A DNA stretch of 64,000 nt from Ascidiella aspersa (Eukaryota), in assembly GCA_963924565.1 (NCBI GenBank), contig OZ004608.1, forward strand, positions 7,440,001 through 7,504,000, read 5' to 3'. The translations under genes were made by a program, and so were the position numbers. The notes beneath the pieces were generated by a model. The model did no database searches. It was not told where the DNA came from and saw only the letters and a program-made list of their open reading frames with translations. Positions 1,535 to 64,000 of the stretch are shown here, in pieces; the first letter of the stretch is position 1; the number at the start of each line of letters is the position of its first letter.

Positions 1535-1689
1535 CAATTCAAAAAGTTGAAAGCAGGAACGCCGAACCCGACTCGGTGCTTTCAGACCCCAAAAGGGTGA
1601 AAGAGGACGACGACGGGTACATCGAGTTTAACCCAGGGGAAAGTCCCGCGGCCCCATCGGCGAATGTTTACGCCGGGTTTAAATTTTAG
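1535..1689 (+). other. G0: orphan terminal exon of a short-tail-class receptor (gene remnant, or the last exon of a gene starting before the window)
   Basis: Open frame ...KRVKEDDDGYIEFNPGESPAAPSANVYAGFKF* (TAG 1687-1689) matches the EDDQGYIEFSPS* ends of G2/G3 and QVYVEFNA* of G5. The acceptor position (aag at 1532-1534) is tentative. No CTLD or TM exon was found in 1-1535. Confidence 0.6.
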
Positions 1690-4625
1690 TTCGTTTGAAC
1701 TTTGTAAAATTTGACCACATCAAAATCTGATTTTAATAATAATTTCGGCAGAACATTTGCTTCTGGCCAGAAACTCTGTATTCGGTTAAATTTGTGTGTA
1801 TTCAACCCCATTTTTCGCGAATAGCCCTTTAATTGAAAAAATTAATAAAAGTTTATCAATAAAGTAAAAACTTCTATAACTTTAGTGTTACGTGTTTATC
1901 AACACAGTAAACACTTAATAAAAGTAATTGCTATAAGCCATATCTTATAGAGTGGTATTATCATTAAGTCGTTTTGCGAATTGATAAATAAGGTTTTGGA
2001 TTAGCGCGTTCTTTTGCTTTCGCATAATCAAATGTATTATTGATTGTATAATATAATATTTCATGATGTAATGTTTTCCGTATTGCGTCCGCCCACCTCG
2101 TTTCATAACTGACGTATAACCTTCTTTTAATCTATAAACATGTCAGCCTTGCGGGCGTTGATAATCACGGTTTGCCACCTGTTTCTCTGGCGCCTCCTGC
2201 CGCCGCAAATTGACCTTAAAATAGCCGTCGTAATCTCAAAAGAGTGTCTAGCCATGTTTGCAAAGTGCTGGCCAGTCTTTCAAAGTCAAATATGACGTAA
2301 CTTTCGTGTTCCTTTCTTTCTACGTATGACTATATATTCGTGTCTTAGACATTATTAAACACCACTGTTTAGTTACAAATGCCGTATTGCGTGCTATAAT
2401 TCCGAAACTGAGATCGCAGACATAGGCGGACACGCAACGAGGTTGAGTGATGTCAATTTGATAAAATGATTACATTTATAGCGTTTTTGCTATATGCTAA
2501 TTTCAAAAGTATTTAAATATAAACCTCTGAGGACACCACAAAACAATTGACGAAATGCAATTTGCTTATCATGCACTTAAAGATGAGCTATCTATCAGTT
2601 TCAGCAATTGTCAAATAAAGATTTCACAAAAATATGTGAAAAAGTTTTTTGATTTAAAAAAATATCCTATCACAATTCTAAAATGTCATTATACTACTAT
2701 ACTTCAACAAAGTTGCAATTATATAAGGACACTGGTAATTCAGGCCTAAAAAACACATTCTCACCAAAATACTAAATATAGAATTTGCCAAGAGGAAACA
2801 CTGTTCACAGGCGTCACTTGTATCGATTGGGTGTAACAAACTCTTGCCAAATCAGTGAGGTAAAATACTTCTTATAATGTGAAACTATAAAGGGCACCGG
2901 ACAGTTTAATCAACATAAACATGTTTTGCAGTCTAAAAATTGGAATTTCCGGCTATAAACAATGCGGGTCGTGATCAAGTATATTGAACGGACATCATTA
3001 ACTTGTAGCAATGACGAGTCTAACAGTTTATACAGTACGAAATACTAAGAAGAACTTGTGAAGGAGAATTCACTGTTTTCATTAGAGGTCGTAATAACAG
3101 AGCTTTACACTTTACATAACCTTTTAAACATTTCTTCAAAATATTCATATAGCGTGTGACGCAAAAGCGTTACTAAATCTATTTAAAAGCATATGATCGA
3201 TTTGCCATGTATTGCCGTGTTTCTTCTGACATCAGATGCACAGATAGATATGATAAACGGTAGCATACAAAAAAGTTTTGTTTGGTAACCTGGTGGAAAA
3301 AGGTTTGTTTCATTTTAGCTTGATTTACGTGAAACAAGTTAAAACAGAAATACATACAAGAAAAGAGTTTCGAACAGCTTTCCATAAAGTTTATAGTGTA
3401 TAAAGTACTTGTATGTTTACAAAATAAATTTGATTAAGAATATGTCGATCTGTAATGTTTATTGGTCATGAGGAAGCCTGAAAGGTAAAACAATATAAAG
3501 CTGAATTTCCAGAGGATTTGCTTTTACATTTTCTAAAGTGCGTTTCAGATATCAAGGGTATATTAGGTATAGCAAGACTTCTCTAGGTGGAATTTGATTT
3601 TCATCATTTTAATACGATTGTTCTTAAATTAAAATATTTGAGTTAAACACCATCCACCGAGATATTTTTAGCAAAACTAAAATAAAACGAACAGCTTGCT
3701 ACCACCAAACAAAACACTCAGATTGTGCATTTTGTATTGATATTCGACGATAAGTTATTCAAATAGTAATGCATGTCGTTAATCAGTAGTAAAAATCTAT
3801 TTTTGCTTCTTGATCTTCTCTGCCTATATCGTTTTAGATTTGCACTGGGGAACAATGCCACTGCAAGCAGACAGAAATGTATTATGAAAACCTTATTGAA
3901 ATTGCAAACGTGATGCTATAAAAGAACATTTGGAAAAAGCAGTGTGTTAAACCACAAAACCTGAAGTGACAAAAGCGCTTATCGGCGGCTGATTTTTTTT
4001 TTCAAGTTCCTACCAAAAAAATTGGTGTTAACAAATAGTTTGTGACATGCCAATTTCGCCTAATAACCGTGCTCTCTTTCATATTGTTATTCTTTAAGAT
4101 CGCGAATTGCAATTAAAACGCTGTTGTTGTTTCACAAAAAATAGTTATTGTTGTTAGGGTTACACTTATTTGAAATGTCCAATGGTTGCACAGTAACGAA
4201 AAGCCATTATATAGCTGTACAACATATCGTTGATGTGTGTCGACCCACAGTTGTTTCTTATGTTTTTACAACAAAGCGCCGCAGTGTTATCCTTAACGTA
4301 ACCTTTTGAAGAAAGTTCACTTCTTGATGTGGGGCTTCCGCACAATGTGTGACGTATACGATGCGACAAAAAAAAAAAAATGTGTTAAGGGAAATACTAT
4401 TCGCACATTTACCTAATGACGAAAAAGATAAAGGATGTATTCAGATCTAGGTATTCCACTTGTATAAGCTCGAACAAATAGTTTATGCTCAAGATATCCA
4501 TTATTCAAAATAAGCGCACTAATTAATTAAAGTGAGAGATTACTGGATTTCCCTAAAATTTCATTTTCTAAAAAGATTTTTTTAGTAATTTCTTTTACAG
4601 TTACAAAAGTTTAATAGGTCTAACA

Positions 4626-7600
4626 ATGAAGGGCCTTGTTTTGGTAATAATGGTTATTTGTGTGAGAAGTGGTTACTCCGAAACCTGGCATGTTTTTGGT
4701 AAATACGAGTATCACATTTCAACAAGCATACGAAGCTTTGATGGAGCTCAGTCAGCTTGCAACGCATTGAATGCAAACCTGGCGAAAGTAAACACCAATG
4801 AGATTCAACAATTTTTGACGGACACAATTAACAGCTTATCAGGTGAGGTTTGTACTTATAATGGCAACACAACTGCATACTGACTGGATTTCATTTTCAG
4901 GTTCTGTTAATACACTTTTCATCGGTTTAAAGTGGAACGCGGCACAAAAGGAATACCAATGGGAGGATGGAACTATTTTGGATGTGGCTCAGTGGGGTGC
5001 AAATCAACCAAGCGGTACTTCACACAAATGTGTTGTGATGAACAACAACCTCGATTATTTTTGGGATAATGTGCCATGCGGAAATTGGAACCACTACATA
5101 TGTTCGAAAAAGTTAGGTGCGTTGTAAATATCCCTATATACAATTACAAAAAACATTATAAAATTAATTTACGACGTAAAAATGTATAGGTTTCAATAGA
5201 TATAATTATGGCCATTTTATGAATGTACCCATTTCGGCTGTAGATATAAATAACCAACTCTTATTTGAAACATCCCAAATATTAAAACCCAGCCTAGTGA
5301 CGTATAGCTAATTGACGTATAATATTCCACTCAAATACGCCTCGCCTTACTGAAAAAAAAAAATATATAAAATAAAACTTCGCTTGTTCTATGCAACAAC
5401 ATATTCACCATTAATGCAATAAAATCCATAATTAAAGGGACCACTACCACAACTGCTACCAAAGCGACGTTGCCATCTACATTATCAACCACAACGACAA
5501 CACCATCTAAATTAACAGGTGCTGTGACTGCAACAACAGGAATGCTCCCCAAACCGACAATTTCATCTACTACATCAAGAAATAGTTCAGATGAGGCAGT
5601 CGGTGAGATAAAATTGTTAACTGATAGGAATTGCAGGGTTTAAAAAGCATAACATAAAAAAATATTTCTTGCTTTAAGGTATCAACCCTACCAACGATAG
5701 TGACGACTTGGCAATAATTATACCTGCTGTCATCTGTGGAGTTGTATTTCTTTGCATCGTGGTTGCACTGGTAACTTATAAAGTGTAAGTGCTTTAGGTC
5801 GAACGAAATGCAGCAGGAGATTTAAAGCTAATATCATTTGTAAAATGTGTTTCAGGAAATACCACAAACCTCAAAATACGCTCACACCAACAGCCAACAA
5901 CCGTGCAGGTCAGTCTGTGAAAATATTTTATTGCTATTTTAACAACAGCTTGAACGACAAAAGGTTTGTTGGACTAATTTAACAAAAAAGACCTAATGAA
6001 AAAAAGTTTTTTTTACCAAGGCTTGATGTAGCTGTTCTATATATGGATATTCGTATGGGTCAATAGTTCGTTTTATGTTAAGTGTTATTGTGTATGCGGT
6101 TTACGTTAAATATACGCTAAACAAACAAAGAGTACTTTTTTAACTAAACTGAAATAAGATGTAAATAAATGTAGACATGTCACAATTGTTTTACATTTTT
6201 TTTTTAACCTTATCCTGTTTTGAATTTGTATCCTTTGGAAGATTTAAATGTCATTTTCTTTGCCAGTTGTTATTAGTATTGAAAACGGTTAAAAGGAAAT
6301 TTATTGACAAAGCGTTTACGCACACTTTAGAGCTTTGGTTAGCCGAAGAGCTCACTTTGGTATATGGGTAATTAATTTGAAAGTGTTTTATTACATTGAT
6401 GGATTACTGGAGAAAATCAATTATGAAAAATAAGAGCGAACGGCAACAAGACCGGTAACTGTTAACTTGTCAAGGCAAACTGCACAACTGCACTAAGCAG
6501 TATCAGGCTTACTTTTTTCTCAAAAGTAACCACGTAGTATAAAACTGCAGAACAGCACGTATACGCCGACATCGACGACGCACGCCACGCCCCCGAGAGC
6601 CCGAGCCACGCCTATTCCAGCATCGAAAACGCGAGCTTGCCGGCCGACAGCGCCCAAATCAGCAATGACGACTACTCCAGACTGAACAGGACGGGACTTC
6701 CCCAGTCGGGACCTTCCCACACCAACTTGGTTTACAACATGGACGTCAAGATGCAGCAGCTGAGCGTGGTCGAGTACAGTTCCATTGATAATGATGTGCC
6801 TGGTGCTCCGGGTTCAGTACAAAGGCGCAGGGCGAACGATGGCAATCTGTACTCGGTCGTGAGAAAAGGTGATATATTTGCTTTGTGTTTTGCTTTGTGT
6901 TTTGCTTTGTGTTTTGCTTTGTGTTTTGTTTAGTGATATGTTATATCAGCGGCTTGGATTTTTTTTGAAAAACAAGTCGTGGATTAATTTGTGTAAATAC
7001 AAGACGCGCCTGTCTATTTTTAAGCAGGTGCCGCGGTAATAAAAAGGATCGGTGTACATTAAAATTAAATTAATGTTAGACCACAGTAAAATTAGTTAAT
7101 TTGACAACCAAAATACATAATTATATAGTGCTTTGATCTTTAATATACTTGCTTCAAAGTAAGCCGGCGTTGGCTTTCTGTCGCACATAAATTAAAACTA
7201 GACGTTACATTAATGCGTTGTTATTTACATACCGTTTTGAAGAGTCCACTAAAATATGTTAAAACTGAAAGCTAGACAAATTCGTTGTTGCTTACATATT
7301 AGATTTTTGTTGTAAACACACATGTGTGTTCATTTTTCTTGCTTACATATTGTTCAAAAATCGCACCTAACCTTCAGCTCTTTAATTTCACCCTTAAAGA
7401 CGCGTTTATACTACGCCTGCGCTGAGCTAAACTGGGCGTGAAATTGCGGTATACTATCGCTGCGTAACAGACAAAGTAAAATCACTTTCACGCTTCGATG
7501 GCGGTCGATCAAAGCGTGAAAATCGCTCCAAAGCGTACCTTTTAGGTAGCTGCAAGGAGCTTTAGTTTAGCAAAGCGTCAAAAGCTCGAACAGTATAATT

Positions 7601-7835
7601 AACTGCAATTACGCTTTGCTCAGCTCAGCGCAGCTGTAGTGCAAACGGGCCTTTACGGTGTACTCTTTTTATAAGTCGTATAGAATGCTTGTTACTACGG
7701 CTAACACTGAAAACAAACTGCTTTCCCCAAACAGACAAACCTGGACGAGTGAACACGATTCAAGTTCCCCAAGGCTCAAGTCATGACGTCGCTGCCGACT
7801 CATCTCAGCCGTTTGAAGACCACCAGGAAGCCTGA
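4626..7835 (+). CDS. G1: type I CTLD-mucin-TM receptor with long tyrosine-motif (ITIM-type) tail, about 391 aa
   Basis: Exons 4626-4842, 4901-5116, 5438-5602, 5679-5784, 5856-5908, 6551-6868, 7735-7835, all GT-AG and in frame. Signal peptide; CTLD with FIGL, QPS, WDN and 4 Cys; Thr-rich stalk; TM LAIIIPAVICGVVFLCIVVALVTY; tail motifs HVYADI, HAYSSI, DDYSRL, VEYSSI, NLYSVVRK. Confidence 0.9.
6877..6930. repeat. 12-bp minisatellite (TTTGCTTTGTGT)n, about 4.5 copies, intronic
   Basis: Directly visible just after the G1 tail-exon donor. It explains the FALC repeat in the ORF track. Confidence 0.9.
7398..7652. mobile_element. PIF/Harbinger-like MITE in the last intron of G1
   Basis: Imperfect inverted termini of about 50 bp (agacgcgtttatactacgcctgcgctgagct / agctcagcgcagctgtagtgcaaacgggcct) flanked by TAA and TTA. 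Confidence 0.65.
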
Positions 7836-9950: not shown

Positions 9951-10055
9951 TAAAATCGACATTTGCAAACGTTTCAGCTATATCTCATGCATGTTACACT
10001 GATGATGGCATGAGGTATTACCGAAACATTTGTAAACAGCGAAATGTCGATTTTA
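9951..10055 (+). other. Imperfect hairpin containing a hammerhead-ribozyme-like core (Penelope-type relic); second copy at about 15603-15715
   Basis: CTGATGA (9999-10005), a stem-II-like segment, GAA, then ACATTT...AAATGT pairing followed by C (GUC site). Inverted arms aaaatcgacattt / aaatgtcgatttt. Stem I does not pair. Confidence 0.45.
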
Positions 10056-10862: not shown

Positions 10863-13496
10863 ATGGAAAGTTTGCGTATCTTGATGTTATGTAGTGTGAT
10901 GGGATGTGGTTACACTGTTACCTGGCATGCATTTGGTGATTACGAGTACTACATTTCACCAAGTAATATTACATTTCAACAAAACTTCAGTGGAGCTCAA
11001 TTAACTTGTAACGCAATGAACGCAAGCCTGGCGAAAGTAAACACCAACGATATTCAACAGTTTCTGAGCAAAACTATTACCAACACGCCAGGTAAAATAA
11101 ACTTCCTGTAAATCCTGTTATGTTATTTACAGTACATAAAACAAAATCTTGTCAATTTTTATAGGCTCTATACATGCACTTTACATCGGTTTAAAATGGA
11201 ATGAATCAAGAAATGAATACCACTGGCTTGATGGAGCAATATTGGATGTGTCTCATTGGGGAACAGGGCAACCAAGCCACAATGAGACATGTGTTGCCAT
11301 GGCAAATTATATCAGTTATTTGTGGGATGATGTTTCCTGTGAGGATTTGACGTCATACATTTGTTCAAAATACTCTGGTACTTGTTTGTACTCGTTTTAG
11401 TGGGTCTAAAAGAATAAATAGTTATGGTAAAAATATAAAAACTAAACAAATGTAAATGTAATAGTTGTATTACAGAAGAAACGATTTTACATTATTAGGT
11501 ATAAGCAATAAAGAAAATGAATCTTAAATGATATATAGATTTGTTTGTTTACTGGTTAGATATTTAGTCTAAAAAATAGGTTTAACGGGAAAGTATAGTA
11601 CCTCCCATTTGACACGATGTTGTATCAGTAGGCTTAAAAGTTGTGCTAATTATTATTAGCATATCATGTCTAGTTGAATAATCGAGTCTCCATCAACAGA
11701 AAGAACCACAACAGATATTGCAACAAGCGAAATGACACCTTCAGCTACACATGCTGAAACAACAGACGAGTTCAAAGCCACAACCCTTAATTCAGGTACA
11801 TAACCCAACAAGTCTACAACCTTTATTGCTAAACTCGTCTGAAATAACCGATATGGGTAACTACAATATTTTTGTCACGCTGTCACATTCCTAACTGACA
11901 CAAAACACAGTCGACGATCGTTCTTTATTACGTGACTTTTCGTTTTGGTTGTTAAGATGTTCTTTTAGTCTTACACTTCGCACGTTTATCGACTCTCAGA
12001 ACGAATGATACATTATTTCATTGAAATTTTTTTGAATGTAAGGTGGTATAGACGGCATATAATATATTTTTATATTTCCGAAAAAAATGATATCATTTGC
12101 TAAAACATGGTACAGAAGTCAAGTTTTTTGTCATCCAGCATAACAATGCTAAATATGTATTAACAGTACATTTAATGCAGGCAAAACAACAGCAACAGCA
12201 ACTATGGCAACACAATTAACAACAACATCAACAATTGCAAGTCCAGGTACATAGCTCGGGATTTCGTTTCGTAATTAAAAGTACAAAAACAAAGTTTGTT
12301 TGAAATAACTTTCTAGACTGCTTAGCGATTGTGTGCCGTTAAGAAATTTCCCCAAAATAATATAATTGATAACAAAAGATTAATAGTCCGTCTTATTTCA
12401 TGAACTAAGAAACCTTTAAAGCTTTAAATTAATTGATAACGTTAGATTAAAATGCATATGAAAATTATTGTTCTGATCAAACAAAGAACGTTCTTGTATT
12501 TAAAGTAGGATGCTGTTCATGTCACACTGATGATGAATTGAGTCTTACAACAATAATTCTGACCCACAAAAAAACTTTTACTTTACGTAGAATGCTGTTC
12601 ATGTGCTAATGATGACTTAAGTCTTACAACAATAATTTTGACTGCTGTTACTTCCGGAGTCGTATTTATTTGCATCGTTGAATCACTCGTCATTTGGAAA
12701 ATGTAAGTGGTTTCGAAATCGACATAAATTGTTAAAAGTTGGTTGACTTATAATGTTCATTCTAGGACACGTAACGGGAACGTAAATAATCTAGCACCTC
12801 CGAAAGTCGACTATACAGGTTTGGATTTTCTAAATTGGTTGTAAATATTCAATTAAGTTGCTGTATTTTAAAATAATCAAATACAGGTATTGTTACTGTT
12901 GTACTGAACTATCTCGTGGGATGTATCTTAATGTGTAGACATGTTGATGTTTGCGGCCGAAACACTTAAACTATGTCCAGCATAGTCACGAACAAGTTAA
13001 TTTGTGTTCACAGAAAATTCGTAGTCGCCTATGAAAATATATTGTGATATATATTTGCGCATTTCATTAATATATGTATAAGCATTTTTGTCTCGTCTTT
13101 TGTTAGCAGTTTATAAATTATTACCGCGAATATTTTAAGGATATATAAAGTTGTGTTACCGCTACGATTTTTGACGAATCTGTCTGTTTAGTGTTTTGAC
13201 AGATGTAAAAAGTGTCCAAAATGTGCTATGCACTGTGTTTTTTTGACTGTTCGGTAAACGTTGCGAACTTTGCCTTCTCTTAAAATTACAATGCTATACG
13301 TTAGAGTTGATGTGCACTTCTTGCAGAACGGCAGGTAAACTTTGACGTCGAACCAAAGCAAAACACAAACGTAAAACAACCAAACAAGCCACTACCGTTC
13401 GAAGAAGATGATTCAGGTTACCTTAAACCCCACTCGACTTATCCGCTTCAAAACCTGGAAGATGACCAAGGCTACATCGAGTTTTCCCCTTCTTAA
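10863..13496 (+). CDS. G2: type I CTLD-mucin-TM receptor, short-tail class (CCSC, TM Glu, DxGY motifs), about 312 aa
   Basis: Exons 10863-11091, 11165-11377, 11700-11795, 12181-12246, 12591-12702, 12766-12818, 13327-13496. CTLD QPS/WDD; TM exon ECCSCANDDLSLTTIILTAVTSGVVFICIVESLVIWKM; tail EEDDSGYLKP...EDDQGYIEFSPS*. Confidence 0.88.
12500..12645 (+). repeat. Two-copy tandem repeat (82-bp period) spanning the G2 TM-exon acceptor
   Basis: AG acceptors end at 12508 and 12590, each followed by (g/a)atgctgttcatgt...agtcttacaacaataatt. Confidence 0.9.
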
Positions 13497-16539: not shown

Positions 16540-19500
16540 ATGGAAAGTTTGCGTATCTTGATGTTATGTAGTGTGATGGGAAGTGGTTGCACTGTTACCT
16601 GGCATGCATTTGGTGATTACGAGTACTACATTTCACCAAGTAATATTACATTTCAACAAAATTTCAGTGGAGCTCAATCAGCTTGTAACGCAATGAACGC
16701 AAGCCTGGCGAAAGTAAACGCCAACGATATTCAACAGTTTCTGAGCAAAACTATTACCAACACGTCAGGTAAAATAAACTTCCTGTAAATCCTATTATGT
16801 TATTTGCAGTACATAAAACAAAATCTAGTCAATTTTTATAGGCTCTATTCATGCACTTTACATCGGTTTAAAATGGAATGATTCAACAAATGAATACAAC
16901 TGGCTTGATGGAGCCATATTGGAGGTGTCTCATTGGGGACCAGGGCAACCTAGCCACAATGAGACATGTGTTGCAATGGCAAAGTATACCAGTTATTTGT
17001 GGGATGATGTTTCCTGTGAGGATTTGACGTCATACATTTGTTCAAAATACTCTGGTACATGTTTGTACTCGTTTTAGTGGGTTTAAAAAAAAAATAATTA
17101 TGGTAAAATTATAAAAAAACTATAAACAAATATAAATGCAATAGTTGTATTACAGAAGAAACGATTTTACATGATTAGGTATAAGCAATAAAGAAAATGA
17201 ATCTTAAATGATATATTTGTTTTTTTTTGTGTATACTGGTTAAAATTCTAGTCTAAAAAACAGGTTTAACGGGAAAGTATAGTGCCTCCCATTTGACACG
17301 ATGTTGTATCAGTAGGGTTAAAAGTTGTGCTAATTATTATTAACATATCATGTCTAGTTGAATAATCGAGTCTCCATCAACAGAAAGAACCACAACAGAT
17401 ATTGCAACAAGCGAAATGACACCTTCAGCTACACATGCTGAAACAACAGACGAGATCAAAGCCACAACCCTTAGTTCAGGTACATAACCCAACAAGTATA
17501 CCTCTATAATTTAACAAAGTTACAACCTTTATTGCTAAACTCGTCTGAAATAACCGATATGGGTAAGTAAATTATTTTTGTCACTCTGTGACATTCCTGA
17601 CTAACACAAAACACAGCAAACGATCGTTCTTTATTACGTGACTTTTCGTTTTGGTTGTTAAGATGTTCTTTTAGTCTTACATTTCGTACGTGTATACTCT
17701 CAGAACGAATGATACATTATTTCATTGACATTTTTTTAATGTAAGGTGGTATAGACGGCATATGATATATTTTTATATTTCCGAAAAAAATTATATCATT
17801 TGCTAATACATGGTATAGAAGTCAAGTGTTTTGTCATCCAGCATAACAATGCTAAATATGTATTAACAGTACATTTAATGCAGGCAAAACAACAGCAACA
17901 ACAATTCTGGCAACACAATTAACATCAACAATTTCAAGTCCAGGTACACAGCTCGGGATTTCGTGTTTTAATGTAAAGTACAAAAACAAAGAAAAAGTTT
18001 GTTAGAAATAACTTTCTAGACTGCTTAGCGATTGTGTGCCGTTTAGACATTTCCAAAAATAATTTACCCAATTGACAAGTAAGAAACCTATAATGCGTCA
18101 AATTAATTTATAACATTAGCTTAAAATGCACAACGAAATTATTGTTGCAACCTGTTCTAATCAAACGAAAAACGTTCTTGTAGTTAAAGTAGGGTGCTGT
18201 ACATGTGCTAATGATGATCTAAGTGTTACAACAATAACTCTGACCCATGAAAAAACTTTTACTGTACGTAGAATGATGTCCATGTGCTAATGATGACCTA
18301 AGTCTTACAACAATAATTCTGACCCATGAAAAAACTTTTACTGTACGTAGAATGCTGACCATGTGCTAATGATGACCTAAGTCTTACAACGATAATTCTG
18401 ACCCACGAAAAAACTTTTACTGTACGTAGAATGCTGTTTATGTGCAAATGATGGCCTAAGTCTTACAACAATAATTCTGACTGCTGTTATTTCCGGAGTC
18501 GTATTAATTTGCATCGTGGAATCGCTCGTCATTTGGAAAATGTAAGTGGTTCCGAAATCGCCATAAATTGTTAAAAGTTGGTTGATTTATAACGTTAATC
18601 ATTCCAGGACACGCAACGGAAACGTCAATACACTGGCACCTCTGAAAGTGGACTACACAGGTATGGATTTTTTTTTAATTTTATTGAATATATCCAATAG
18701 GGTTGTAGTATTTTAAAATAGCGTCAAATGCTGTTAATTGTTTCTTAGTTACACATATTGTAGTAATTTTACCACTGAAATTGTATTGTTGTACTAAAAT
18801 CTTTCGGTGATGTAGCTTTGTATTTGTAAGCATGCTCGTGTTTGCGGCCATTACACTTAAAATATGGCCAGCAAAATCACGAACAAGTTAATTTGTGTTC
18901 ACCAAAGATTCATAGGGCACAGTCGCCTATGAAAATGCATAGTGAATGAAAAAAATATGAGTCGTTATAGATGACGCGTTATTTTCTTTAGCTATTAACA
19001 AATGACCAAAATATATTGCTCCACACAAAAATAGAAAATATTGTTTCTGTCTTGGTCGGAACAAAATGTATTCCCTATTAAGACGAAACTGAAAACTTAT
19101 TGGCGATGAAAAGTTCATTTATAAATTCGATTGACATGCTTTTAACCAACGTTTCAGGCAACCTATTTAAGTCTCCTTGAGCAAAATGCTTAACAATTAC
19201 AAGAAGAGCTGTTTTTAATTAATATTATGTATAAGAGTGTTGACTTTTTTTGATAAGAATTTATTTAGTAGATTGTAACCGCGAATATTTTAAGTTAAGC
19301 TAACTGCCGCGATTTTTGACAAACGTGTTTTTTCAGTGATTCCACAAATGTGTTTTGCTATTATTGGGTTTTATCTTACCTAGAACTATTAACACTGATC
19401 TATATTAGGTGTAAAAAGAGTTCGATAGGTTTGACGTACTGTTGTACTGAGTATTTTTTAACCGTTGGCAATACGTTATGAAGTTTGCCTTCTTCTTAAT

Positions 19501-19712
19501 GACAGTGCTATAGGCTATAGAGTTGATTTTGATTTATTGCAGAACGCCAGGTGAACCTTGAAAATGAACCAAAGCAAAACACTAATGTGAAAAAACCAAA
19601 CAAGCCTCTACGGTTTGACGAAGACGAGTCAGGTTACCTTAAACCTAATTCGCACTTCCCCCTTCAACATCTGGAAGATGACCAAGGCTACATCGAGTTT
19701 TCCCCTTCTTAG
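16540..19712 (+). CDS. G3: recent duplicate of G2, short-tail-class CTLD receptor, about 310 aa
   Basis: Exons 16540-16768, 16842-17054, 17384-17479, 17884-17943, 18430-18541, 18608-18660, 19543-19712. TM exon ECCLCANDGLSLTTIILTAVISGVVLICIVESLVIWKM; tail DEDESGYLKP...EDDQGYIEFSPS*. Confidence 0.88.
18185..18482 (+). repeat. 79-bp tandem repeat (4 acceptor-bearing copies) spanning the G3 TM-exon acceptor
   Basis: AG acceptors end at 18192, 18271, 18350 and 18429, an exact 79-bp period. Confidence 0.92.
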
Positions 19713-21524: not shown

Positions 21525-22036
21525 ATGAACTATTTACTGTTAATGACGCTTTGCTGCTTGGTGGGAAACTGTTACTCAGCAACCTGGTATACTTTGGGTG
21601 ACTATGAATATCACATTTCACCGAGAAATATCAACTACCAAGAAAATTTTGACGGAGCTCTTTCTGCTTGCAACGCGATGAATGCAACCCTGGCCAAAGT
21701 TAACACCAATGAGATTCAACAGTTTTTAACTGAAAAAATAAACAGCTTACCATGTAAGTTTACCTCTAATCAGAAGACATTTAGAAGTATGCAACTAAAA
21801 AGTATTACTCTCTTTCAGTTGATCCAAGTTTTTCAGTGATGTTTTACATCGGTCTTCACAGGAGTACTGACGAATATAACTGGTTGGATGGGACGATGTT
21901 GGATGTGGCTCAGTGGGGAACTGGGCAACCAAGTAGTGATTACGAATGTGTTGTGATGGAAAGAAATCTCCGGTATTTGTGGGAAGATATACAATGCGAC
22001 ACTTGGACCTCTTATATATGTTCCAGACATGTTTAA
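21525..22036 (+). CDS. G4: secreted single-domain C-type lectin (signal peptide + CTLD only), about 148 aa
   Basis: Exons 21525-21753 and 21819-22036. The CTLD is complete (FYIGL, QPS, WED, 4 Cys) and ends YICSRHV* at TAA 22034-22036, where paralogs have a splice donor. Confidence 0.8.
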
Positions 22037-24026: not shown

Positions 24027-24273
24027 GTAAAATCAGTCTTGTTCCCTCAGTTCAAGGGTTATTGTACTGAGATCTGTAGATCCCCAGGGACACTTTAAGT
24101 AGTTTTAAGACGTAAGAAACCTAATAGAAATCTTAGTTATCATAACAAAAATAAAAATGTAATGTTTAATATTAAGACAATAGGGGAAATGGACAAATGC
24201 TTTTGTGCATTCTATATTTAAACAACAAGTCTCTTACTTTGGAGCATAATAGTTGGAGGTTGTAATAAGATGT

Positions 24274-37300: not shown

Positions 37301-37535
37301 CAGCTCGTCTGGTAATTGTCATTGCTAATTGCTTGTTGTTTTTACTATGCCTGTTTTTTTATTTTAAATAATTTTTTTTTTAAATAATAAATCAAATGAT
37401 CATCCCACAGGAAAACCTGGACAGGTTAACACGATTCAGCCTCCAACAACGCCAAACAACGGTTATGACGTCATTCACGACCAGAGTCAAGAAAGTAACG
37501 ATTTTAGCTCTTCTGATGCAAATGAAGACGACTAA
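34380..37535 (+). CDS. G6: type I CTLD-mucin-TM receptor, long tyrosine-motif tail, chimeric origin, about 370 aa
   Basis: Exons 34380-34617, 34813-35025, 35528-35605, 36007-36136, 36205-36251, 36836-37117, 37411-37535. CTLD QPS/WDD; TM LTVIIVAVICSVLFVCILVAFVIY; tail HVYADI, IDYNNV, HYSTI, GEYSQL, PAYATVNK. Confidence 0.85.
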
Positions 37536-41300: not shown

Positions 41301-41510
41301 AACTATCAACACCGGTGATGTGGCTCAACAGGAAACAGCAAAAGGAACATACTGTATAGATCTGCCAGAAGGATTTTAAAACTAAGCTCTGTTACATAGG
41401 GCCCAAAACACATCGGCTGAGTGTGGAACACAACTCAACCAGCACAACGTAAAAACAAATGCCTGCTAACGCAAAACAATAAACTCTGGTTAAAGCTACG
41501 GTAAACAAAG
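38371..41510 (+). pseudogene. G7: pseudogene of a long-tail CTLD receptor
   Basis: ATG 38371 is out of frame with the CTLD (frameshift in the signal peptide). In-frame TGA at 38676-38678 replaces the Leu of YIGL. The tail exon from 41231 stops early. Exon relics: 38371-38583, 38650-38865, 40347-40541, 40718-40847, 40911-40957, 41231 to about 41510. Confidence 0.85.
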
Positions 41511-48200: not shown

Positions 48201-50408
48201 TTTGCATTATTGTGGCGTTCGTAATATACCGAAGGTAAGTGATTTTAAACACACGAAAGAAAAATCGAAGTACAATACTAATATTGCATTACAGGAAATT
48301 CAAGCCAGCAGGAAAATCACCGATCCATGCAATAAACAACGGTACAGGTAACGTACCACCCTTTCAAAATTGATTTAGGAAATAACTAATACAATTAATG
48401 GACGTACAACTTTAATGTTGTGTTCTTAAACCTTATGGGCAAAGTCTGTGTAGGCTCATGATGAGTTCAAATCAGGGGTGTCCAACATGAGGCACGCGTG
48501 CCAAATGGACACGCGACCTAATAAAAATGGCACGCAAGCCCCCCAAAAATACAGCGAATTTTCAAAACAGCTAAATTTGTTATACAGCCAATTGTCATTG
48601 TTTATTCACAATACAAAACAATCCAAGTAATTACGACAATAAACAATAACTTCTGATTTTATAACACTATATATTGTTTTTATTTTTTGTATAAAACCGC
48701 TGTTGCATTAAAAAAAATAGTTGCTAAACTTTGTCACTGGAAGAAGTTATAAGATAAACATTGGCACTTCGGCATGTTTGAGTTGGCCACCCCTGGTTTA
48801 AATAAATGAAAAATGTAAACAATGTTTAAAAAATACAATTCATAACGCAAGGTTAATGCATTCTCGATTGATTGTAGGGCAACACGTGTATGCTGACATC
48901 GACTACAACAACATAGAGTCCAGGCGTCCGAGCCACGAATACTCCACCATCGACACACCAGGGGTTAAAGCTCAAGTGGACACAGAAGAAGGCGAATATT
49001 CGCACCTTAATTTGTCTGGACTTCCCGTAACTCAGCCGGTCTGTAACATGGAACCGAAAACGCCCAGGCTGAGTGTGGAGTACAGCACCACAAAAGACGA
49101 AATCATGATTTGTGACGAAAACAAAGTTCCGGTTTATGCTGTCGTTAACAAAGGTAAGTTTCCACTACATGTTTGACGAATTTGGAAATGCATAAGCAAT
49201 TTAACATTGAAATAATAATAATGCATGACTTTGTTGTTAAATTACGCAAAGGCCCACATTTCTGTCACTCGGCAACAAACCAAAAGTTTGCAAATGTCAA
49301 CCCGCACAATTTTACTGTTATTTCCAATTTTGTAGTAACCTACGTTGAAGGATGTAACAAAGGTAAACAAACTCGGCGGTACCGGGAGCACAATGAACGG
49401 CATACACAGAATATATTTTTTTATTTATAAAACGGATGTTTTGGACTCTACCGCTTGTCCTAATGATTATTTTTGGACAAGGAATTGCCAATACTATATA
49501 GACTCAGTTTTAACGAATGACTTACGATGTTTTTAGTGTTTTACAAATGTGTTGATTTCCCAAGCTTAAAACTTATGACGGACATAACCGCAATACAGAA
49601 CATTTTACTTAGTATCACTGCTAGCATAGCGTTAGGGGTTCCAAGGCATGTATTATACCTACCACAATATAATCACAGGGAAACGTGAACAAGCAAACAC
49701 GATTCAGCCTCCCGCCGTTGAACCAAACAACGAAACTGACGTCATGGAGAACAGCGCAACTGAAAAGAAAAAGGGAGAGGCGGAAAGCGAAAGTGTCCCG
49801 GTTTATGCTGTTGTCAATAAAGGTAAAGCAAATAACTATAATAGGGCCTGGTTTATGGATCTGAACAATTATGGCTGTTTAGTGAACAGCTGTTAACGAA
49901 GTAGAGAAGCTATTAAGCTCACAATAGATGCTATTATTAAGAAAGCTTTTTAAAATAATCTTTTCTGATTTTCGAACAGAATAATGATGCCAGAATAACG
50001 TATTTTAATTTCTGGAATGATTAAACAGCTTATTTATATAAAACTAAAACACAATTATACACCATAGTATGATTTACATGCATGCAATGGCAAGAAATAA
50101 CTAAGCCGTAACCTGAACTGAATAATATTACTCAAAGCGAAATCTCAAATTACATATATAGAGTCGCCGTACAATAATATAATTTCAAGAATTTCACAGT
50201 CAACACAACGTATAACCTTTATCTTAGACGATTCAGTTTGTTTTGTGTTGCCTTGAGTTTCTTGAATACAACATCACATTTGTTAATTTGGACAGGAAAA
50301 CGAGATAAGGTGAACGCAAATCAGTCTACCGGTACGTCTAGCAACTCCAATGACGTCACTACTGATGATAACAACACCAACCCATTCGGAAAATTATCCC
50401 ACGAATAA
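45252..50408 (+). CDS. G8: type I CTLD-mucin-TM receptor, long tail with duplicated VPVYAVVNK motif, about 460 aa
   Basis: Exons 45252-45459, 45524-45736, 47272-47523, 48105-48234, 48295-48347 (or 48341), 48878-49153, 49679-49822, 50296-50408. CTLD QPT/WDD; (PSTSR)n stalk; TM LTIIIVAVICSVLFVCIIVAFVIY; tail YADI, IDYNNI, EYSTI, EYSHL, and PVYAVVNK twice. Confidence 0.88.
45984..46286. mobile_element. Degenerate hAT-type MITE in a G8 intron
   Basis: Termini cattggttcttaa / ggttaataattactg with subterminal ggggtg(c/a) motifs. Confidence 0.45.
47277..47437 (+). repeat. Coding 15-bp minisatellite (CCATCGACGTCAAGA)n encoding a PSTSR mucin stalk
   Basis: About 10 units, 4 of them identical, inside exon 47272-47523. 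Confidence 0.92.
48473..48795. mobile_element. hAT-type MITE in a G8 intron
   Basis: TIRs caggggtgtccaac / gttggccacccctg; TSD gttcaaat / gtttaaat. Confidence 0.82.
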
Positions 50409-53163: not shown

Positions 53164-54287
53164 ATGCGGATAATTGTCTTTTTGATAACCTGCTGTTTCA
53201 TTGGTAAAAGTGCCAGTGACGCCTGGTACACTTTTGGTAGTTATAATTACAATATTTACACTTCTGGAAACAAGACGTTCGCCCAGCAGGCCTTTGCAGC
53301 TTGTAGCGCTTTTGGTGGTACACTGGCAAAAGTAAACACGACAGAAACACAGCAATTTTTGTCGACAAACTGAAAACGGTTGCTGGTAAATATACTTAAG
53401 TGTGAATTACTATAAAGGAAACTGTTCGTCAATACAATTTAAAAAACGAACGACAATACTTAAAACGCATATAGGGACGTTTTTCGTGGATGGTTTTCAA
53501 CAATGCTTTGTTTTATGTTGCAACGTAAATAACTTAAATGGAAATCATGATTAATTACAAATACCTTGATCAATACCAACCAAAACTATGCATGTACCGC
53601 AAGTAAGGAAAACATCCAATTTATTGGGTTGTCAATAATACTTCAGCGTTGTGCGAAGAACACAGTTTAAAAAAAGTACATTCGTTATGTATTAAAAAAT
53701 TTGTTTTAAATTAAATTCGATCTTGTTTTTCAAAATTTAACTTTATATAGCGTTTAAGCAATCATGAAGAAAGCGGTTATGTTTAGGGGACAAACAAAGC
53801 TTTGCTATCGGATTAAGGCGAGTAATCGGCACCAATATATTTCTGTGGTTGGACGGATTAATCGTGAAGTTTTCAGGATGGTGCGTTGGCGAACCGAACC
53901 ATTTTAGAAGGATTCAGGACTGTGTAATTATGAAGTAAGCAAGCCAGTTCACGTGGAATGACGTTGCCCGCAGCACGGAGCAACAATATATTTGTCAGAC
54001 CGACATCGGTATGTCTTTATGAAAAACATAAGTTTTGTCTGATAAAGTTAAACATGACGTATGTAATTTGCAGAACCAACTAAGAAGGCAAAGACACACA
54101 CAACTACTCAACCGATAGCCACGGTTGATATACAACAAAGAAACAACAGACGTTGCGCAAGAAACATCGGTCGATTTAACTGTAAAGCCATCCAGCAATA
54201 TTTCATCGACATCAGTCTTTCAGGTGACAAAGTTTTGGCGGGTCGATTTACAAACAGGGCTCGAGTGACATTACTAGCAATTTATAG
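53164..54287 (+). pseudogene. G9: CTLD pseudogene with EPN/WND motifs; no TM or tail exon found
   Basis: Exon 53164-53385 has a late frameshift (TGA 53371-53373). Exon 53787-54008 reads ...WCVGEPNHFRRIQDCVIMK*ASQFTWNDVAR..., with TAA at 53936-53938 and the third Cys replaced by Arg. The stalk exon from 54074 is frameshifted. Confidence 0.85.
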
Positions 54288-56835: not shown

Positions 56836-59800
56836 ATGCTTAGAGTTGTGTTTTTCATCATGTATTGCATGACCGGACAAAGTTACAGTGAAGAATGGCA
56901 TAACTTTGGTAGTTATGAATACTACATTCACTTTAATGGAAAGGCGAATTTTAGCAAAGCCATAAAAGCTTGTGAAACAAAAGGTGGCCAACTAGCTAAA
57001 GTAAACTCGTCAGAAATTCAGAACTTCTTGGTCAACAAATTGAAAAATTTGCAAAATATTACAGGTAATTGAGAATTTTTTTGGGGGGTTTAAACATTAT
57101 TGCTTTCACAGGTCTTTATTTCAATAACTGCGCCAAAATAATCGCATACCAAAATATTTTGTTTTTCTTTTGTTAAGTTGTTTCGAAAATAAAACCTTTC
57201 AGGTTCCATGTTTTTGGGCAAAAATTAATTTACAACATGTGTTCGACGATCGTTTAACGAAAAAGTAAATTTAGGTGCTACAAGTCATTTAGTAAAGTTT
57301 TACTTTTGAAAAGCTAATTGGTTTTGGGAATTCTATAAGTTTACATCTTCTCATACCTAGGATCCGAGTGTTACTATTTTCACGTTGTTTTTACTTGTAA
57401 AAAATTCATGGTTTTTCCTTTAAAAGATGTCATTACTTTTTAAAAGATTTCAAGTTTTACATTGGGCTGGTGCGGAATTCTACGACAAAATTCCAGTGCT
57501 TGGATGAATCAAGGCTAAATTATTCACATTGGATCGGTGGTATTGAACCGAAAATTCGCAACCCAAGTCGCAATTGTGTTGTCATTGTTCCGAATAAAAC
57601 TTATTATTGGGATGATATTGAATGCAAAAGAAAGAAAAATTACATTTGTCAGAAATACATTGGTATGGGTAAATTAGTCCAATAATTCTAACCTTGGTGT
57701 AAGTAAAACAGTAACGTTTTGTATGTAGAACCTACTACCACTGCTTCTCTATCAACAAAGCCAGACGCTACCAACACCATCGTAACAAATCGAACATCGA
57801 CAAAAAATGCAGAAACAACTGCAAATCCAATCACCAATGAACTTATAACAGAACATCCGTCTACAAAAATGTCCTTGATGACAATGCAATCGAACGAAGC
57901 TTCTTCTGAAACAACCAATTTTCAGGAACCGACAGGTGACATTATTAAAGATACAAAACTTGACCGAGTATTTTTGCCACAACTGTAACCACTATTAAAT
58001 GTTAAAATAGCGATATCTGAAACACTTATTAATTTACATTTGAGAAACGAAAAATAGGAGCGAATGAAACAGCCACGAGGCTATGGCCCCAAAACTATAT
58101 TTTGCCGAGTTTTAGCGACATAAATACTAAAAGCTTTATTAGTTGACTGGCACCTTGTTATATCCCATTTCTGAATATTTGCATGCCCCAAAATAATGGT
58201 CTTGAATCCACCCCTGGCGCCAAAACAGTGTTAATATTGCTGCAGAAACGCATAATTTTATGTACCTTGCTGGAATATACTTAAACATTAACTGATTTAA
58301 AAATATTAAGTAACAGAAGTGTCTTATGTATTTAGCCGGCAACGTTGCTGAAGATAGTTATAATAATTTGTCCGTTATACTTGGATCTACATTTGCTGGA
58401 ATCGCGGTTCTTCTTTGCACAGTCGCCATTGTGATTTATAGAAGGTTGGTTTTAAATCTAGTTCACAAAGCTGGCGAGTTTCTGATTTGACAAACAATGG
58501 TGGTTAAATAAGATAGTGATGTGGTTTACTAACCTACATGTGAAACTTCAAATTTTGTCAGCAGAATCAATAGTATTGAAAAACGTATATGGCAAACTGA
58601 ATATTTAAAATTAGAAAATGTATTTTTACGCTTACACTTAAATGACGACAATGACTACAAATAGGTGCAAAGTAAATGTTTTGCAGACTTCCCTGTCTTG
58701 GTCAAAAGTCAATTATTTGAAAGTTTTAGTCATTTAAATGAGAAATAAATTTCGCCACAAAAAAGGCGTCATCATTCTCTAATAGAAAATATTGTGGCGA
58801 AATATGTTGCTCTTTTAATTGACTAAAACTTATAAATGTCGGACTTTGACCACGACAGAAACGTCTGAAGAATACTTGAAAAAATCTATTTAAAGGAAGC
58901 GTGGAAAGAATGTTGCTCCTTCTACTGCAATTCGGGTTCAACAAGGTACGTCAGTTTGTTGTTCAACGCACCAACGCAAGTGACTAATCAGTATGATTAA
59001 CGCTTTAGCAATTAAAGTGTTGAAATACTACGTCAGATGCACGTATACAATGGATTTCACATGATCGCGAAGTTGAATCAATAACAGCTGTAATATTCAC
59101 AATCACATTCTAAAGTTCAACACGTGTTAACACCACTTATTTCTATTGTTTACGCCTATGCAACAATATGTACAGAACAGAGAGTAATAAATGGATTTTT
59201 TTAAAGAATCCGACAATCACGAGAAAATAAGCTATTCAAATCTAAATTTTCATTGGTGGTTACTGTCTCTAACTAATAATACATAAGGGTTAACGTAACT
59301 TGAATTATTATATTATAATCCTATTACATTCAATAAACATTGATACAGACGAAAATTACCCTGGTTATGTCAACGCTGATATCGACGAAATACAACCAAA
59401 AAACGAATTTCTCAAATTACATCAAAAAGGTGAGAATCAAATAATATTAGTGCAACCGCAAGTCGCATATTCCACAATGGAAGAAGCCAGCGTCCTGCGC
59501 GAAATCAATAATTTAGAAGACGAATATTCTCACCTTAACGACCGAGCTGCTGCTTCGATTCCCACTCCAATCGTTCGCGATGAAACGTTTCTGTTTAATG
59601 GTGACACGCCGATCGTTGGATACAGCACCGTTGCAGAGGTGGGGATTGAACCTGCGACCTACGAAGCGATTAACGCAGGTTAGGACCGCACTTTTACCCG
59701 ATTACGGGAATGAAACTTTCAGACACAAAATCAAAAATATAGCTATAGTATGAAATAAATGTAAGGGTTATATACATATATTGGTATTGCGTAAATAGAG

Positions 59801-63848: not shown

Positions 63849-63907
63849 GCGTCAACATTTTAAAATTTTGTTTGTTTTGTGATTGGCAGGAATATATCTG
63901 AGAAACA

Positions 63908-64000
63908 ATGTACAGTGTGGTGCTTCTGGTGATCTGTTGTTTGACTGGTGTAAGCACTAGTGAAGTCGGGTATAGGTTAGGTAGTTATGAGTATTACATT
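63908..64000 (+). CDS. G11: start of a further CTLD paralog, cut by the window edge
   Basis: MYSVVLLVICCLTGVSTSEVGYRLGSYEYYI matches the family signal peptide plus the G(S/D/N)YEYYI start of the CTLD. Upstream acceptor cag at 63887-63889. Confidence 0.8.
   Translation, partial: MYSVVLLVICCLTGVSTSEVGYRLGSYEYYI

What the first reader, a model, noticed from the sequence alone, without database searches (positions are those of the whole stretch)
1535..64000. Tandem complex of paired activating/inhibitory type I C-type lectin receptors
Seen: about 12 co-oriented paralogs share one ectodomain plan (CTLD + mucin stalk) joined to two mutually exclusive TM/tail modules, alongside a soluble member and pseudogenes. 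Established: vertebrate paired-receptor clusters (Ly49/NKG2/Dectin in the NK complex, KIR/LILR, Siglecs) use this logic. However, NK-complex lectin receptors are type II proteins, whereas these are type I with C-terminal tails. Inference: an independently evolved, rapidly turning-over immune or allorecognition receptor complex in an invertebrate. I do not recognise it as a named family.
Basis: partly seen in the sequence, partly recalled or inferred. Interest (0 to 1): 0.92.

Follow-up and report, generated by a model that had tools for sequence, protein, structure and literature searches.

The report
Sea-squirt lectin receptors with interchangeable tails
The window holds eleven same-strand genes of a very large sea-squirt family of membrane sugar-binding (C-type lectin) receptors, in which closely related outer domains carry two different tyrosine-motif tails; this resembles vertebrate immune paired receptors, but no expression or signalling has been shown.

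Summary
The window contains 11 co-oriented two-exon C-type lectin heads plus one orphan tail exon. They follow one plan: signal peptide, CTLD, Ser/Thr-rich stalk, TM exon, juxtamembrane micro-exon, tail.

There are two C-terminal classes:
- **Class A** (G1, G6, G7, G8, divergent G10): uncharged TM and a ~150-residue tail with 5 conserved tyrosine positions, one fitting the ITIM pattern in 6 of 9 copies.
- **Class B** (G2, G3, G5): Cys cluster, Glu in the TM, and a ~70-residue tail with acidic GY-x-x-P and GY(I/V)EF motifs.

G4 stops right after the lectin domain. G7 and G9 are pseudogenes. Tail exons are under purifying selection (dN/dS 0.17-0.24).

The activating/inhibitory reading is only partly supported:
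- No canonical ITAM or hemITAM is conserved.
- The charged TM residue is acidic and occurs in only three genes.
- Genes just upstream pair an A-type TM with a B tail.
- Genes ~1.3 Mb away carry both tail exons in one gene.

The window is one piece of a ~1.7 Mb array. This scan already reported the same family 1.08 and 1.55 Mb upstream. One RNA run gave almost no reads. I found no published description.

The parts
1586..1689 (+). G0: orphan class-B-type tail exon (second half of the B motif, acidic-GYIEF). No head lies between it and the previous gene's own tail exon.
   Evidence: profile E=4e-6
4626..7835 (+). G1, class A, intact 389-aa model. Exons: 4626-4842, 4901-5116 (CTLD), 5438-5602 (stalk), 5679-5784 (uncharged TM), 5856-5902 (47-nt juxtamembrane), 6551-6868 (tail T1), 7735-7835 (tail T2).
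10863..13496 (+). G2, class B, intact 312-aa model. Exons: 10863-11091, 11165-11377 (CTLD), 11700-11795 and 12181-12246 (stalk), 12591-12702 (Cys cluster + TM with Glu), 12766-12818 (53-nt juxtamembrane), 13327-13496 (tail B). A partial extra copy of the TM-exon 5' part lies at 12505-12564.
16540..19712 (+). G3, class B, intact 310-aa model, recent duplicate of G2. Exons: 16540-16768, 16842-17054, 17384-17479, 17884-17943, 18430-18541, 18608-18660, 19543-19712. A 79-nt tandem repeat (3.6 copies, 18195-18481) repeats the 5' part of the TM exon.
21525..22039 (+). G4: signal peptide + CTLD only. A stop codon follows two codons after the domain, and no TM or tail exon was found downstream. It is a soluble lectin or a truncated copy.
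26274..30074 (+). G5, class B. Exons: CTLD 26274-26490 and 26560-26772, stalk pieces near 27128-28675, Cys-cluster/Glu TM exon 28777-28888, tail exon 29905-30074 (B motif plus a G5-only YYNL-x9-YENL). The juxtamembrane micro-exon is not resolved.
34380..37535 (+). G6, class A. Exons: CTLD 34380-34617 and 34813-35025, TM 36031-36136, JM 36205-36251, T1 36836-37117, T2 37411-37535. The signal peptide is atypical, and an extra partial copy of exon 2 lies at 34677-34772.
38403..41440 (+). G7, class A pseudogene: no start codon, TGA in CTLD exon 2 (about 38676), tail T1 frameshifted after 41352. TM exon ends at 40847; JM exon is 40911-40957.
45252..49824 (+). G8, class A. Exons: CTLD 45252-45458 and 45524-45739 (approximate), long stalk with a 15-nt x10.5 repeat (47278-47435), TM 48129-48234, JM 48295-48341, T1 48878-49153, T2 from 49679.
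53164..54013 (+). G9: pseudogene of the second head clade (EPN/WND type), with a frameshift in exon 1 and a TAA in exon 2. No TM or tail was found.
56836..59678 (+). G10: second head clade with a divergent class-A ending. Exons: CTLD 56836-57064 and about 57450-57663, stalk 57707-57985, uncharged TM (58344-58441), T1 59349-59678.
63908..64000 (+). G11: start of the next gene (second head clade). It continues beyond the window, with TM about 1.1 kb past the window end.

Best explanation
The window is a 64-kb piece of a lineage-specific, megabase-scale tandem array in a sea-squirt genome. The array encodes type I membrane C-type-lectin receptors.

Each gene is built from phase-compatible exon blocks: signal peptide + CTLD (2 exons), Ser/Thr-rich stalk exons (phase 1-1), a TM exon (1-2), a juxtamembrane micro-exon (2-1) and one or two tail exons (phase-1 acceptors). 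Tandem duplication, gene conversion and block exchange recombine heads, TM exons and tail exons.

In this window, one head clade therefore carries either of two endings:
- A long multi-tyrosine tail (class A, including an ITIM-pattern site).
- A short acidic two-tyrosine tail behind a Cys-cluster and Glu-containing TM (class B).

Inferred mechanism: the variable CTLD loops bind glycan or protein ligands. The conserved tyrosines are then phosphorylated and recruit different SH2-domain effectors, so the two classes give different outputs. Class B probably forms disulfide-linked dimers. Which class activates and which inhibits cannot be read from the sequence.
For: Gene content and models:
- Complete canonical models close for G1, G2 and G3.

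Array size:
- More than 150 head-exon matches lie almost all on C2 5.87-7.54 Mb.

Two endings on one head clade:
- The clade has 100/99 support.

Block exchange:
- The upstream gene is a DNA mosaic of a G1-like stalk/TM/JM block (81%) and a G2/G3-like tail block (72-76%).
- dS differs more than tenfold between exons of the same gene pair.

Functional constraint:
- Tail B has dN/dS 0.17, tail A T1 0.19-0.24, and heads 0.2-0.7.
- In tails otherwise about 35% identical, the conserved columns are the tyrosine motifs.
- Head variability sits in the canonical ligand-binding loops, around QPx and before WDD.
- The closest solved CTLDs are the myeloid group II receptors BDCA-2, DCIR and Dectin-2.

Wider context:
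- The closest public proteins are uncharacterised Ciona and Clavelina type I CTLD-mucin-TM proteins.
- Tunicates possess ITAM/ITIM pathway enzymes, according to PMC12582321.
Against: - No transcript evidence. The only RNA run of the species gave 7 partial reads on 1500-7499, with about 6% of the run read at a 97% identity cut-off.
- Stalk exons of G5-G10 and the G5 juxtamembrane exon are not resolved.
- ITIM-pattern hits are expected by chance in roughly a third of tails with 6-8 tyrosines; only their positional conservation argues for function.
- The QPS/QPN/QPT and WDD variants of the sugar-binding motifs leave carbohydrate binding uncertain.
- No tail matches any Pfam family.
Confidence: 0.7

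Rival explanations
1. A true paired system. Class A is inhibitory (ITIM recruits an SHP-type phosphatase). Class B is activating, either through its own ITAM-like tail or through a partner bound via the TM Glu. Both see the same ligands, and the balance sets the cell's response.
For: - The same head clade carries two endings.
- An ITIM-pattern tyrosine sits at a homologous position in 6 of 9 class A tails.
- Class B has a short tail, a charged TM residue and a membrane-proximal Cys cluster, as in disulfide-linked signalling chains.
- G5 has YYNL-x9-YENL.
Against: - G6 and G8 lack the ITIM pattern (Thr at +3).
- Class A also has acidic YxxL motifs, and G8 has an ITAM-pattern pair.
- Class B's conserved motifs are YxxP and Y(I/V)EF, not ITAM or hemITAM.
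- The G5 motif is not shared with other copies.
- The TM Glu is found in only three genes, while tail B also sits behind three uncharged TM types.
- Genes at C2 6.11 and 6.18 Mb carry the A-type and B-type tail exons together.
Confidence: 0.25
2. Endocytic or scavenger lectin receptors. The tyrosine motifs (YxxPhi) and acidic clusters are sorting signals for uptake and trafficking of bound glycoconjugates, as in DEC-205, the mannose receptor or DC-SIGN, rather than phosphotyrosine signalling sites.
For: - Nearly all conserved tyrosines fit YxxPhi.
- Class B tyrosines follow acidic runs.
- Heads resemble endocytic group II and VI CTLDs.
Against: - Five conserved tyrosine positions per class A tail, with conserved flanks such as EYSHLN, are more than sorting usually needs.
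- The first class B tyrosine has a conserved Pro at +3, which is not a YxxPhi motif.
Confidence: 0.2
3. Non-immune recognition or adhesion molecules, for example for gamete, larval-settlement or tissue interactions. The family would use a lectin head on a mucin stalk, like selectins or the CD93 group.
For: - The type I CTLD-mucin-TM plan is shared with adhesion lectins.
- The Ciona relative has a 400-residue mucin stalk and a short tail.
- There is almost no signal in the one RNA run, whose tissue is unknown.
Against: - Massive tandem expansion, pseudogene turnover and module shuffling are typical of immune-type families.
- No EGF or sushi domains were found.
Confidence: 0.1
4. A largely dead or decaying repeat array with no current function.
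For: - Two clear pseudogenes are present: G7 and G9.
- G4 is truncated, one tail exon is orphaned, and partial exon copies occur.
- Almost no RNA reads were found.
Against: - Purifying selection acts on heads, TM and tails in old and young pairs.
- Complete open models close for G1, G2 and G3.
Confidence: 0.05

Closest known systems
Vertebrate NK-complex and myeloid group II/V C-type lectin receptors (DCIR/DCAR, Dectin-2, BDCA-2, Ly49, NKG2)
   Same: - A single CTLD head whose best solved-structure matches are CLEC4C, CLEC4A and CLEC6A.
- Tandem gene complex.
- Related heads with different signalling ends.
- An ITIM-pattern tyrosine in one class.
   Different: - The vertebrate receptors are type II, with an N-terminal tail and no signal peptide; these are type I.
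- Activating vertebrate members use a Lys/Arg TM residue and a separate ITAM chain. Here the TM charge is Glu and the tail carries its own tyrosines.
- No orthology was shown.
Botryllus schlosseri fester co-receptors (FcoR; PMC12582321)
   Same: - Tunicate type I receptor genes in clusters.
- Tails combine ITIM, hemITAM-like and 'core' YxxV/I motifs.
- Motifs are swapped by allele or splicing.
   Different: - FcoR ectodomains are immunoglobulin-type, not lectin.
- No sequence similarity was tested or expected.
- In this family, swapping is by gene-level exon-block exchange; splicing is untested.
Ciona intestinalis XP_002129718.2 / XP_026691695.1 and Clavelina lepadiformis CAK8689445.1 (uncharacterised CTLD proteins)
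   Same: - These are the best public matches to the head (36-43% identity).
- They share the same head start motif.
- Two of them share the plan signal peptide-CTLD-Ser/Thr stalk-TM-tail.
   Different: - Their tails are short or different, and I did not see the class A or class B motifs in them.
- They are not reported as paired or clustered.
Disulfide-linked ITAM signalling chains (DAP12, FcR gamma, CD3 zeta)
   Same: The class B TM exon has a membrane-proximal Cys cluster, an acidic residue inside the TM and a short tyrosine tail. I recall the adaptor features from general knowledge; I did not test them here.
   Different: - Class B carries a full lectin ectodomain.
- The Glu lies near the inner end of the TM.
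- There is no canonical ITAM and no Pfam match, including the ITAM family.
Vertebrate type I CTLD membrane proteins (layilin, CD302, chondrolectin, CD93/thrombomodulin group, selectins)
   Same: Type I topology with an N-terminal CTLD; some also have a mucin-like stalk.
   Different: - The vertebrate proteins are single or few-copy genes, often with EGF or sushi domains.
- They have no multi-tyrosine tail classes.
- They are not among the best sequence matches.

Membership tests
C-type lectin-like domain superfamily (Pfam PF00059) | Significant match to the Lectin_C profile | tested here: met
   E=3.2e-13, 50.8 bits for the G5 open frame. Single exons score 33-39 bits against a cut-off of 22.6. 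There are 61 PDB CTLD chains at E<=1e-3.
C-type lectin-like domain superfamily (Pfam PF00059) | Four framework cysteines and the YIGL/W-x-D core | tested here: met
   Conserved in the alignment of nine heads. The exception is p67080, outside the window, which lost one Cys.
Ca2+-dependent sugar-binding CTLDs | EPN or QPD tripeptide plus WND motif | tested here: inconclusive
   G1-G8 have QPS, QPN or QPT with WDD. G9 and the genes just beyond the window's end have EPN with WND; G10 has EPK with WDD. Binding was not assayed.
NK-complex / group II-V lectin receptors | Type II topology (N-terminal cytoplasmic tail, signal-anchor) | tested here: not met
   A hydrophobic N-terminal leader sits directly before the CTLD, and the TM exon lies downstream of the stalk.
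NK-complex / group II-V lectin receptors | Activating members carry Lys/Arg in the TM to bind an ITAM chain | tested here: not met
   Class B TM has Glu; class A TMs are uncharged.
Paired receptor families (functional class) | Closely related ectodomains on different signalling ends within one cluster | tested here: met
   One head clade (100/99) holds class A, class B and a tail-less member.
Paired receptor families (functional class) | One class with canonical ITIM [SILV]xYxx[ILV] | tested here: inconclusive
   The pattern is present at the homologous tyrosine in 6 of 9 aligned class A tails (G1, G10, p75080, p81888-type via another site, L013, L015). G6 and G8 have Thr at +3.
Paired receptor families (functional class) | Opposite signalling outputs of the two classes | not testable with these tools
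   Needs reporter or phosphopeptide assays.
ITAM-bearing receptors | YxxL/I-x(6-8)-YxxL/I conserved in the tail | tested here: not met
   Absent in G2, G3, G0 and the upstream and distant class B tails. G5 has a 9-residue spacer and is alone in having the motif. G8 (class A) has one match that is not conserved. There is no Pfam ITAM match.
hemITAM receptors (CLEC-2 / Dectin-1 type) | [DE][DE][DE]xYxxL | tested here: not met
   Class B has an acidic run plus GY, but Pro or Phe at +3. Class A's acidic YS(H/Q/R)L lacks the full triad.
Ascidian CTLD-mucin-TM proteins (Ciona XP_026691695.1-like) | Signal peptide, head starting (T)W(H/Y)xF/L..EY.I, Ser/Thr stalk, single TM | tested here: met
   Searches compared. 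Tails differ.

The most novel reading that the evidence does not exclude
An independently evolved chordate immunoreceptor complex. Lectin heads would be fused in cis either to ITIM-type tails or to a DAP12-like module (disulfide-linked dimer, charged TM). Exon-block exchange, and possibly skipping of the phase-symmetric T1 exon, would re-tune signalling. Such a complex would serve glycan-based self/non-self or microbial discrimination as a functional analogue of the NK and leukocyte receptor complexes.
Probability: 0.2. Interest if true: 0.85.

Novelty: new variant of a known kind. Interest (0 to 1): 0.6.

Why it matters
Families of related receptors with different tyrosine-motif tails underlie innate discrimination in vertebrates (Ly49, KIR, DCIR/DCAR, Siglecs, FCRL). 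They appear to arise repeatedly by convergence.

This would be a megabase-scale lectin-based version in the closest invertebrate relatives of vertebrates. It is built as type I proteins from phase-compatible exon blocks. That offers a clear case of how heads and signalling ends are re-paired in evolution, and candidate receptors for ascidian immunity or allorecognition.

It also yields two conserved tyrosine-motif cassettes with no Pfam match, which can be tested directly with SH2-binding assays.

Tried and rejected
- **RNA support.** The only RNA run of the species (X3) was laid on 1500-7499 and gave 7 partial reads. This is no evidence either way: about 6% of the run was read, the tissue is unknown and the cut-off was 97%.
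- **Whole-library HMMER search with the G5 head.** The list was dominated by multi-CTLD proteins. Only three ascidian single-CTLD relatives were useful, and the species' own proteome is not in the library.
- **The search for homologous proteins with the Clavelina relative.** It found only itself and one paralogue.
- **Pfam on all tail and TM exons, up to E=10.** Nothing meaningful came back.
- **Homology of class A's last exon (T2) with tail B.** One suggestive local alignment appeared (KP..V..Q..GY, E=0.03 in a tiny set), but hhalign gave no signal, so this is left open.
- **Positive selection on heads.** The G2/G3 head dN/dS is 0.73 on 16 changes, which is not significant.
- **G5 juxtamembrane exon.** No convincing candidate was found.
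- **Spliced models.** All searches used single exons or uninterrupted frames by reference, so there is no full-length fold or full-length homology search.
- **Complex prediction.** None was run, because I make no binding claim.
- **Literature.** Four searches found no description of this family.
Full report
**Setting**

The window is G000:C2:7440001-7504000 of a 308.6-Mb, 75-contig eukaryotic assembly with about 34% GC. The closest public proteins to the lectin heads come from Ciona intestinalis and Clavelina lepadiformis at 36-43% identity. The genome is therefore an ascidian whose own proteome is not in the protein libraries. Earlier notes of this scan call it a sea squirt. I did not determine the species.

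**Observation**

tblastn with one head, and then with a panel of exon translations, found 11 heads, all on the + strand. Each is split by a phase-1 intron of 58-400 nt into two exons: signal peptide plus the N-terminal half of the CTLD, and the C-terminal half.

- Pfam Lectin_C scores E=3e-13.
- The best solved-structure matches are BDCA-2, DCIR, Dectin-2, CLEC4D and CD23.
- Each head is followed by Ser/Thr/Pro-rich stalk exons. Several hold tandem peptide repeats, for example 15 nt x10.5 in G8 and 30 nt x2.8 in G7.

**Exon plan**

By reading splice sites and phases I found a shared 3' plan:

- a TM exon (phase-1 acceptor, phase-2 donor);
- about 65-70 nt later, a micro-exon of 47 nt (class A: 5856-5902, 36205-36251, 40911-40957, 48295-48341) or 53 nt (class B: 12766-12818, 18608-18660);
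- a tail exon with a phase-1 acceptor.

Class A has a second tail exon (7735-7835, 37411-37535, 49679 onward). With these exons, G1, G2 and G3 close as complete open reading frames of 389, 312 and 310 residues, with GT-AG at every junction. The stalk exons of G5-G10 and the micro-exon of G5 remain unresolved.

**Two endings**

- **Class A (G1, G6, G7, G8; G10 in a divergent form).** The TM is uncharged, and the tail is about 140-170 residues with 6-8 tyrosines.
- **Class B (G2, G3, G5).** A CxxC/CCSC cluster lies just outside the membrane. A Glu replaces a Val five to six residues before the cytoplasmic Lys. The tail is about 70 residues.

The TM exons of both classes are homologous to each other: 10 of 15 core residues are identical between G1 and G2.

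A profile search of the window plus 120 kb of flanks found no gene with both a class A T1 exon and a class B tail exon.

Status of the other units:

- G4 has a stop two codons after the CTLD, and no TM or tail exon follows.
- G7 has no start codon, a TGA in exon 2 and a frameshifted tail.
- G9 has a frameshift and a TAA.
- An orphan class-B-type exon sits at 1586-1689.

**Are the tails real coding sequence?**

There is no RNA support. The only RNA run of this species, laid on 1500-7499, gave 7 partial reads. Only about 6% of the run was read, at a 97% cut-off and from unknown tissue, so this shows neither silence nor expression.

Evolutionary constraint does support function:

| Exon and pair | dN/dS |
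|---|---|
| Tail B, G2/G3 | 0.17 (15 synonymous, 13 non-synonymous changes) |
| Class A T1, G6/G8 | 0.24 |
| Class A T1, G1/G8 | 0.19 |
| TM exons | 0.2-0.5 |
| Heads | 0.2-0.7 |

In tails that are otherwise about 35% identical, the conserved columns are the tyrosine motifs:

- Class A: DID after the first Tyr, YST(I/L/M), (D/E)YS(H/Q/R)LN, V(E/D/G)YS(S/T)(V/I/T), and a terminal Y.
- Class B: an acidic run followed by GY(L/V/M)(K/E)P, then an acidic run followed by GY(I/V)EF.

**Motif reading**

The class A V-x-Y-S-(S/T)-(V/I) site fits the ITIM pattern in 6 of 9 aligned copies. G6 and G8 have Thr at +3. A single ITIM-pattern hit is expected by chance in roughly a third of such tyrosine-rich tails, so only its positional conservation carries weight.

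- Class A also has an acidic YxxL site, and G8 has an ITAM-pattern pair that its relatives lack.
- Class B has no ITAM or hemITAM. G5's YYNL-x9-YENL has a spacer one residue beyond the usual 6-8 and is unique to G5.
- The first class B tyrosine has a conserved Pro at +3. From general knowledge of SH2 specificity this is the Crk/Abl/Nck type of site; this is an inference.
- No tail matches any Pfam family, including the ITAM family.

**Modules are separable**

Several results show that heads, TM exons and tail exons recombine:

- Just upstream of the window, two genes with heads of a different clade combine a class-A-type uncharged TM exon (85-91% identical to G1's) with a class B tail.
- At the DNA level, one of them is a mosaic of a G1-like stalk/TM/micro-exon block (81% over 725 nt) and a G2/G3-like tail block (72-76%).
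- Synonymous divergence differs more than tenfold between exons of one gene pair. For G2/G3 it is 0.05 in the head against 0.65 in the tail. For G10 and its downstream copy it is 0.3 in the head against 0.014 in the tail. This indicates gene conversion or block exchange.
- About 1.26-1.33 Mb upstream (C2 6.1105-6.1146 and 6.1834-6.1874 Mb, minus strand), genes carry a class-A-like T1 exon with an ITIM-pattern site. About 150 nt later follows a phase-compatible class-B-like last exon. The B exon therefore occupies the 'last exon' slot, and the two tails are not intrinsically exclusive.
- The TM exons of those distant genes, and of other distant B-tail genes, are uncharged. The Cys-cluster and Glu TM is confined to G2, G3 and G5 among the copies examined.
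- T1 is a phase 1-1 exon (318 nt in G1), so skipping it would keep the reading frame. Whether that happens is unknown.

**Heads**

The tree of 23 heads places G1-G8 plus one downstream copy in one clade (100/99). That clade contains class A, class B and the tail-less G4. Inside it the order is unresolved, and class B may be monophyletic (72% of bootstraps). G9-G11 and the genes downstream form a second clade with EPN/WND-type motifs and A-like tails.

Within the first clade the framework is nearly invariant. The positions after QP, before Y-L-W-D-D and after the third Cys each hold 4-7 residue types; these are the canonical ligand-binding loops. The QPS/QPN/QPT and WDD variants leave sugar binding open.

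**Scale and precedent**

A six-frame search of the genome gave more than 150 head-exon matches, nearly all on C2 at 5.87-7.54 Mb and 2.38-2.76 Mb.

This scan has already reported the same family 1.08 and 1.55 Mb upstream (s1-790865, s1-790843), so this is not the first sighting in the scan.

Four literature searches found no description of it. The nearest published system is the Ig-type FcoR family of Botryllus, which swaps ITIM and hemITAM motifs between alleles and splice forms.

**Verdict**

This is a real and apparently undescribed ascidian multigene family of type I lectin receptors with modular tyrosine-motif tails. It works like, but is not a member of, the vertebrate paired lectin receptor families. 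The activating/inhibitory assignment, an immune role and expression remain to be shown.

**Limits**

All searches used single exons or uninterrupted frames by reference.
- The search for homologous proteins is limited by query length, so a blank there says nothing about full-length relatives.

Noticed in passing
window 18195-18481 (and 12505-12564): A 79-nt unit is repeated 3.6 times in G3 (92% match), with one extra partial copy in G2. It contains the acceptor and the first half (Cys cluster + outer TM) of the class B TM exon. The extra copies carry stop codons or lack the rest of the TM. They could act as decoy acceptors.
   Followed up: partly
flank L006-L007 (window -14642..-12204 and -6851..-3910): Two nearly identical genes have EPN-type heads, a G1-like uncharged TM exon and a G2-like class B tail. 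One of them is a DNA mosaic of blocks from different window genes.
   Followed up: yes
L017+L024 (C2:6183100-6187400, minus strand) and L018+L026: These are composite-tail genes. A class-A-like multi-tyrosine exon is followed about 150 nt later by a class-B-like last exon in the same reading phase. In the A-like exon the EYSHLN tyrosine is replaced by Asn.
   Followed up: partly
window 30546-31324: A segment downstream of G5's last exon is 72-79% identical to the intron between the micro-exon and the tail exon of the upstream mosaic gene. It may be a relic of a lost gene 3' end.
   Followed up: no
window 63173-63984 and 54922-55383: A shared repeat is found at both places. It includes a 13/43/82-nt satellite (GGAGTCGGACTCG units) at 63626-63821. 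It lies inside the G9 pseudogene region and again just before G11.
   Followed up: no
window 24175-24476: Inverted-repeat ORF pieces on opposite strands lie in the region downstream of G4. This may be a small foldback or transposon remnant.
   Followed up: no
window 29207-29386: An AAC/AAT-rich imperfect microsatellite (periods 24-54) lies in the intron before G5's tail exon. It gives long Asn/Asp-rich or Thr/Ala-rich open frames on the + strand, and Val-rich frames on the minus strand, that are not genes.
   Followed up: no
window 34677-34772 and 38880-38996: Partial duplicates of CTLD exon 2 lie inside G6 (before the real exon 2) and directly after G7's exon 2.
   Followed up: no
window 6877-6935: A 12-nt repeat (TTTGCTTTGTGT x4.3) lies immediately after the donor of G1's tail exon T1. 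If the intron were retained, it would add a Phe-Ala-Leu-Cys repeat to the tail.
   Followed up: no
runs X1, X2: Two 2023 runs of the same species hold only 72-78% of the sampled 31-mers of window 4600-14599. This could reflect low coverage or haplotype differences in this array.
   Followed up: no
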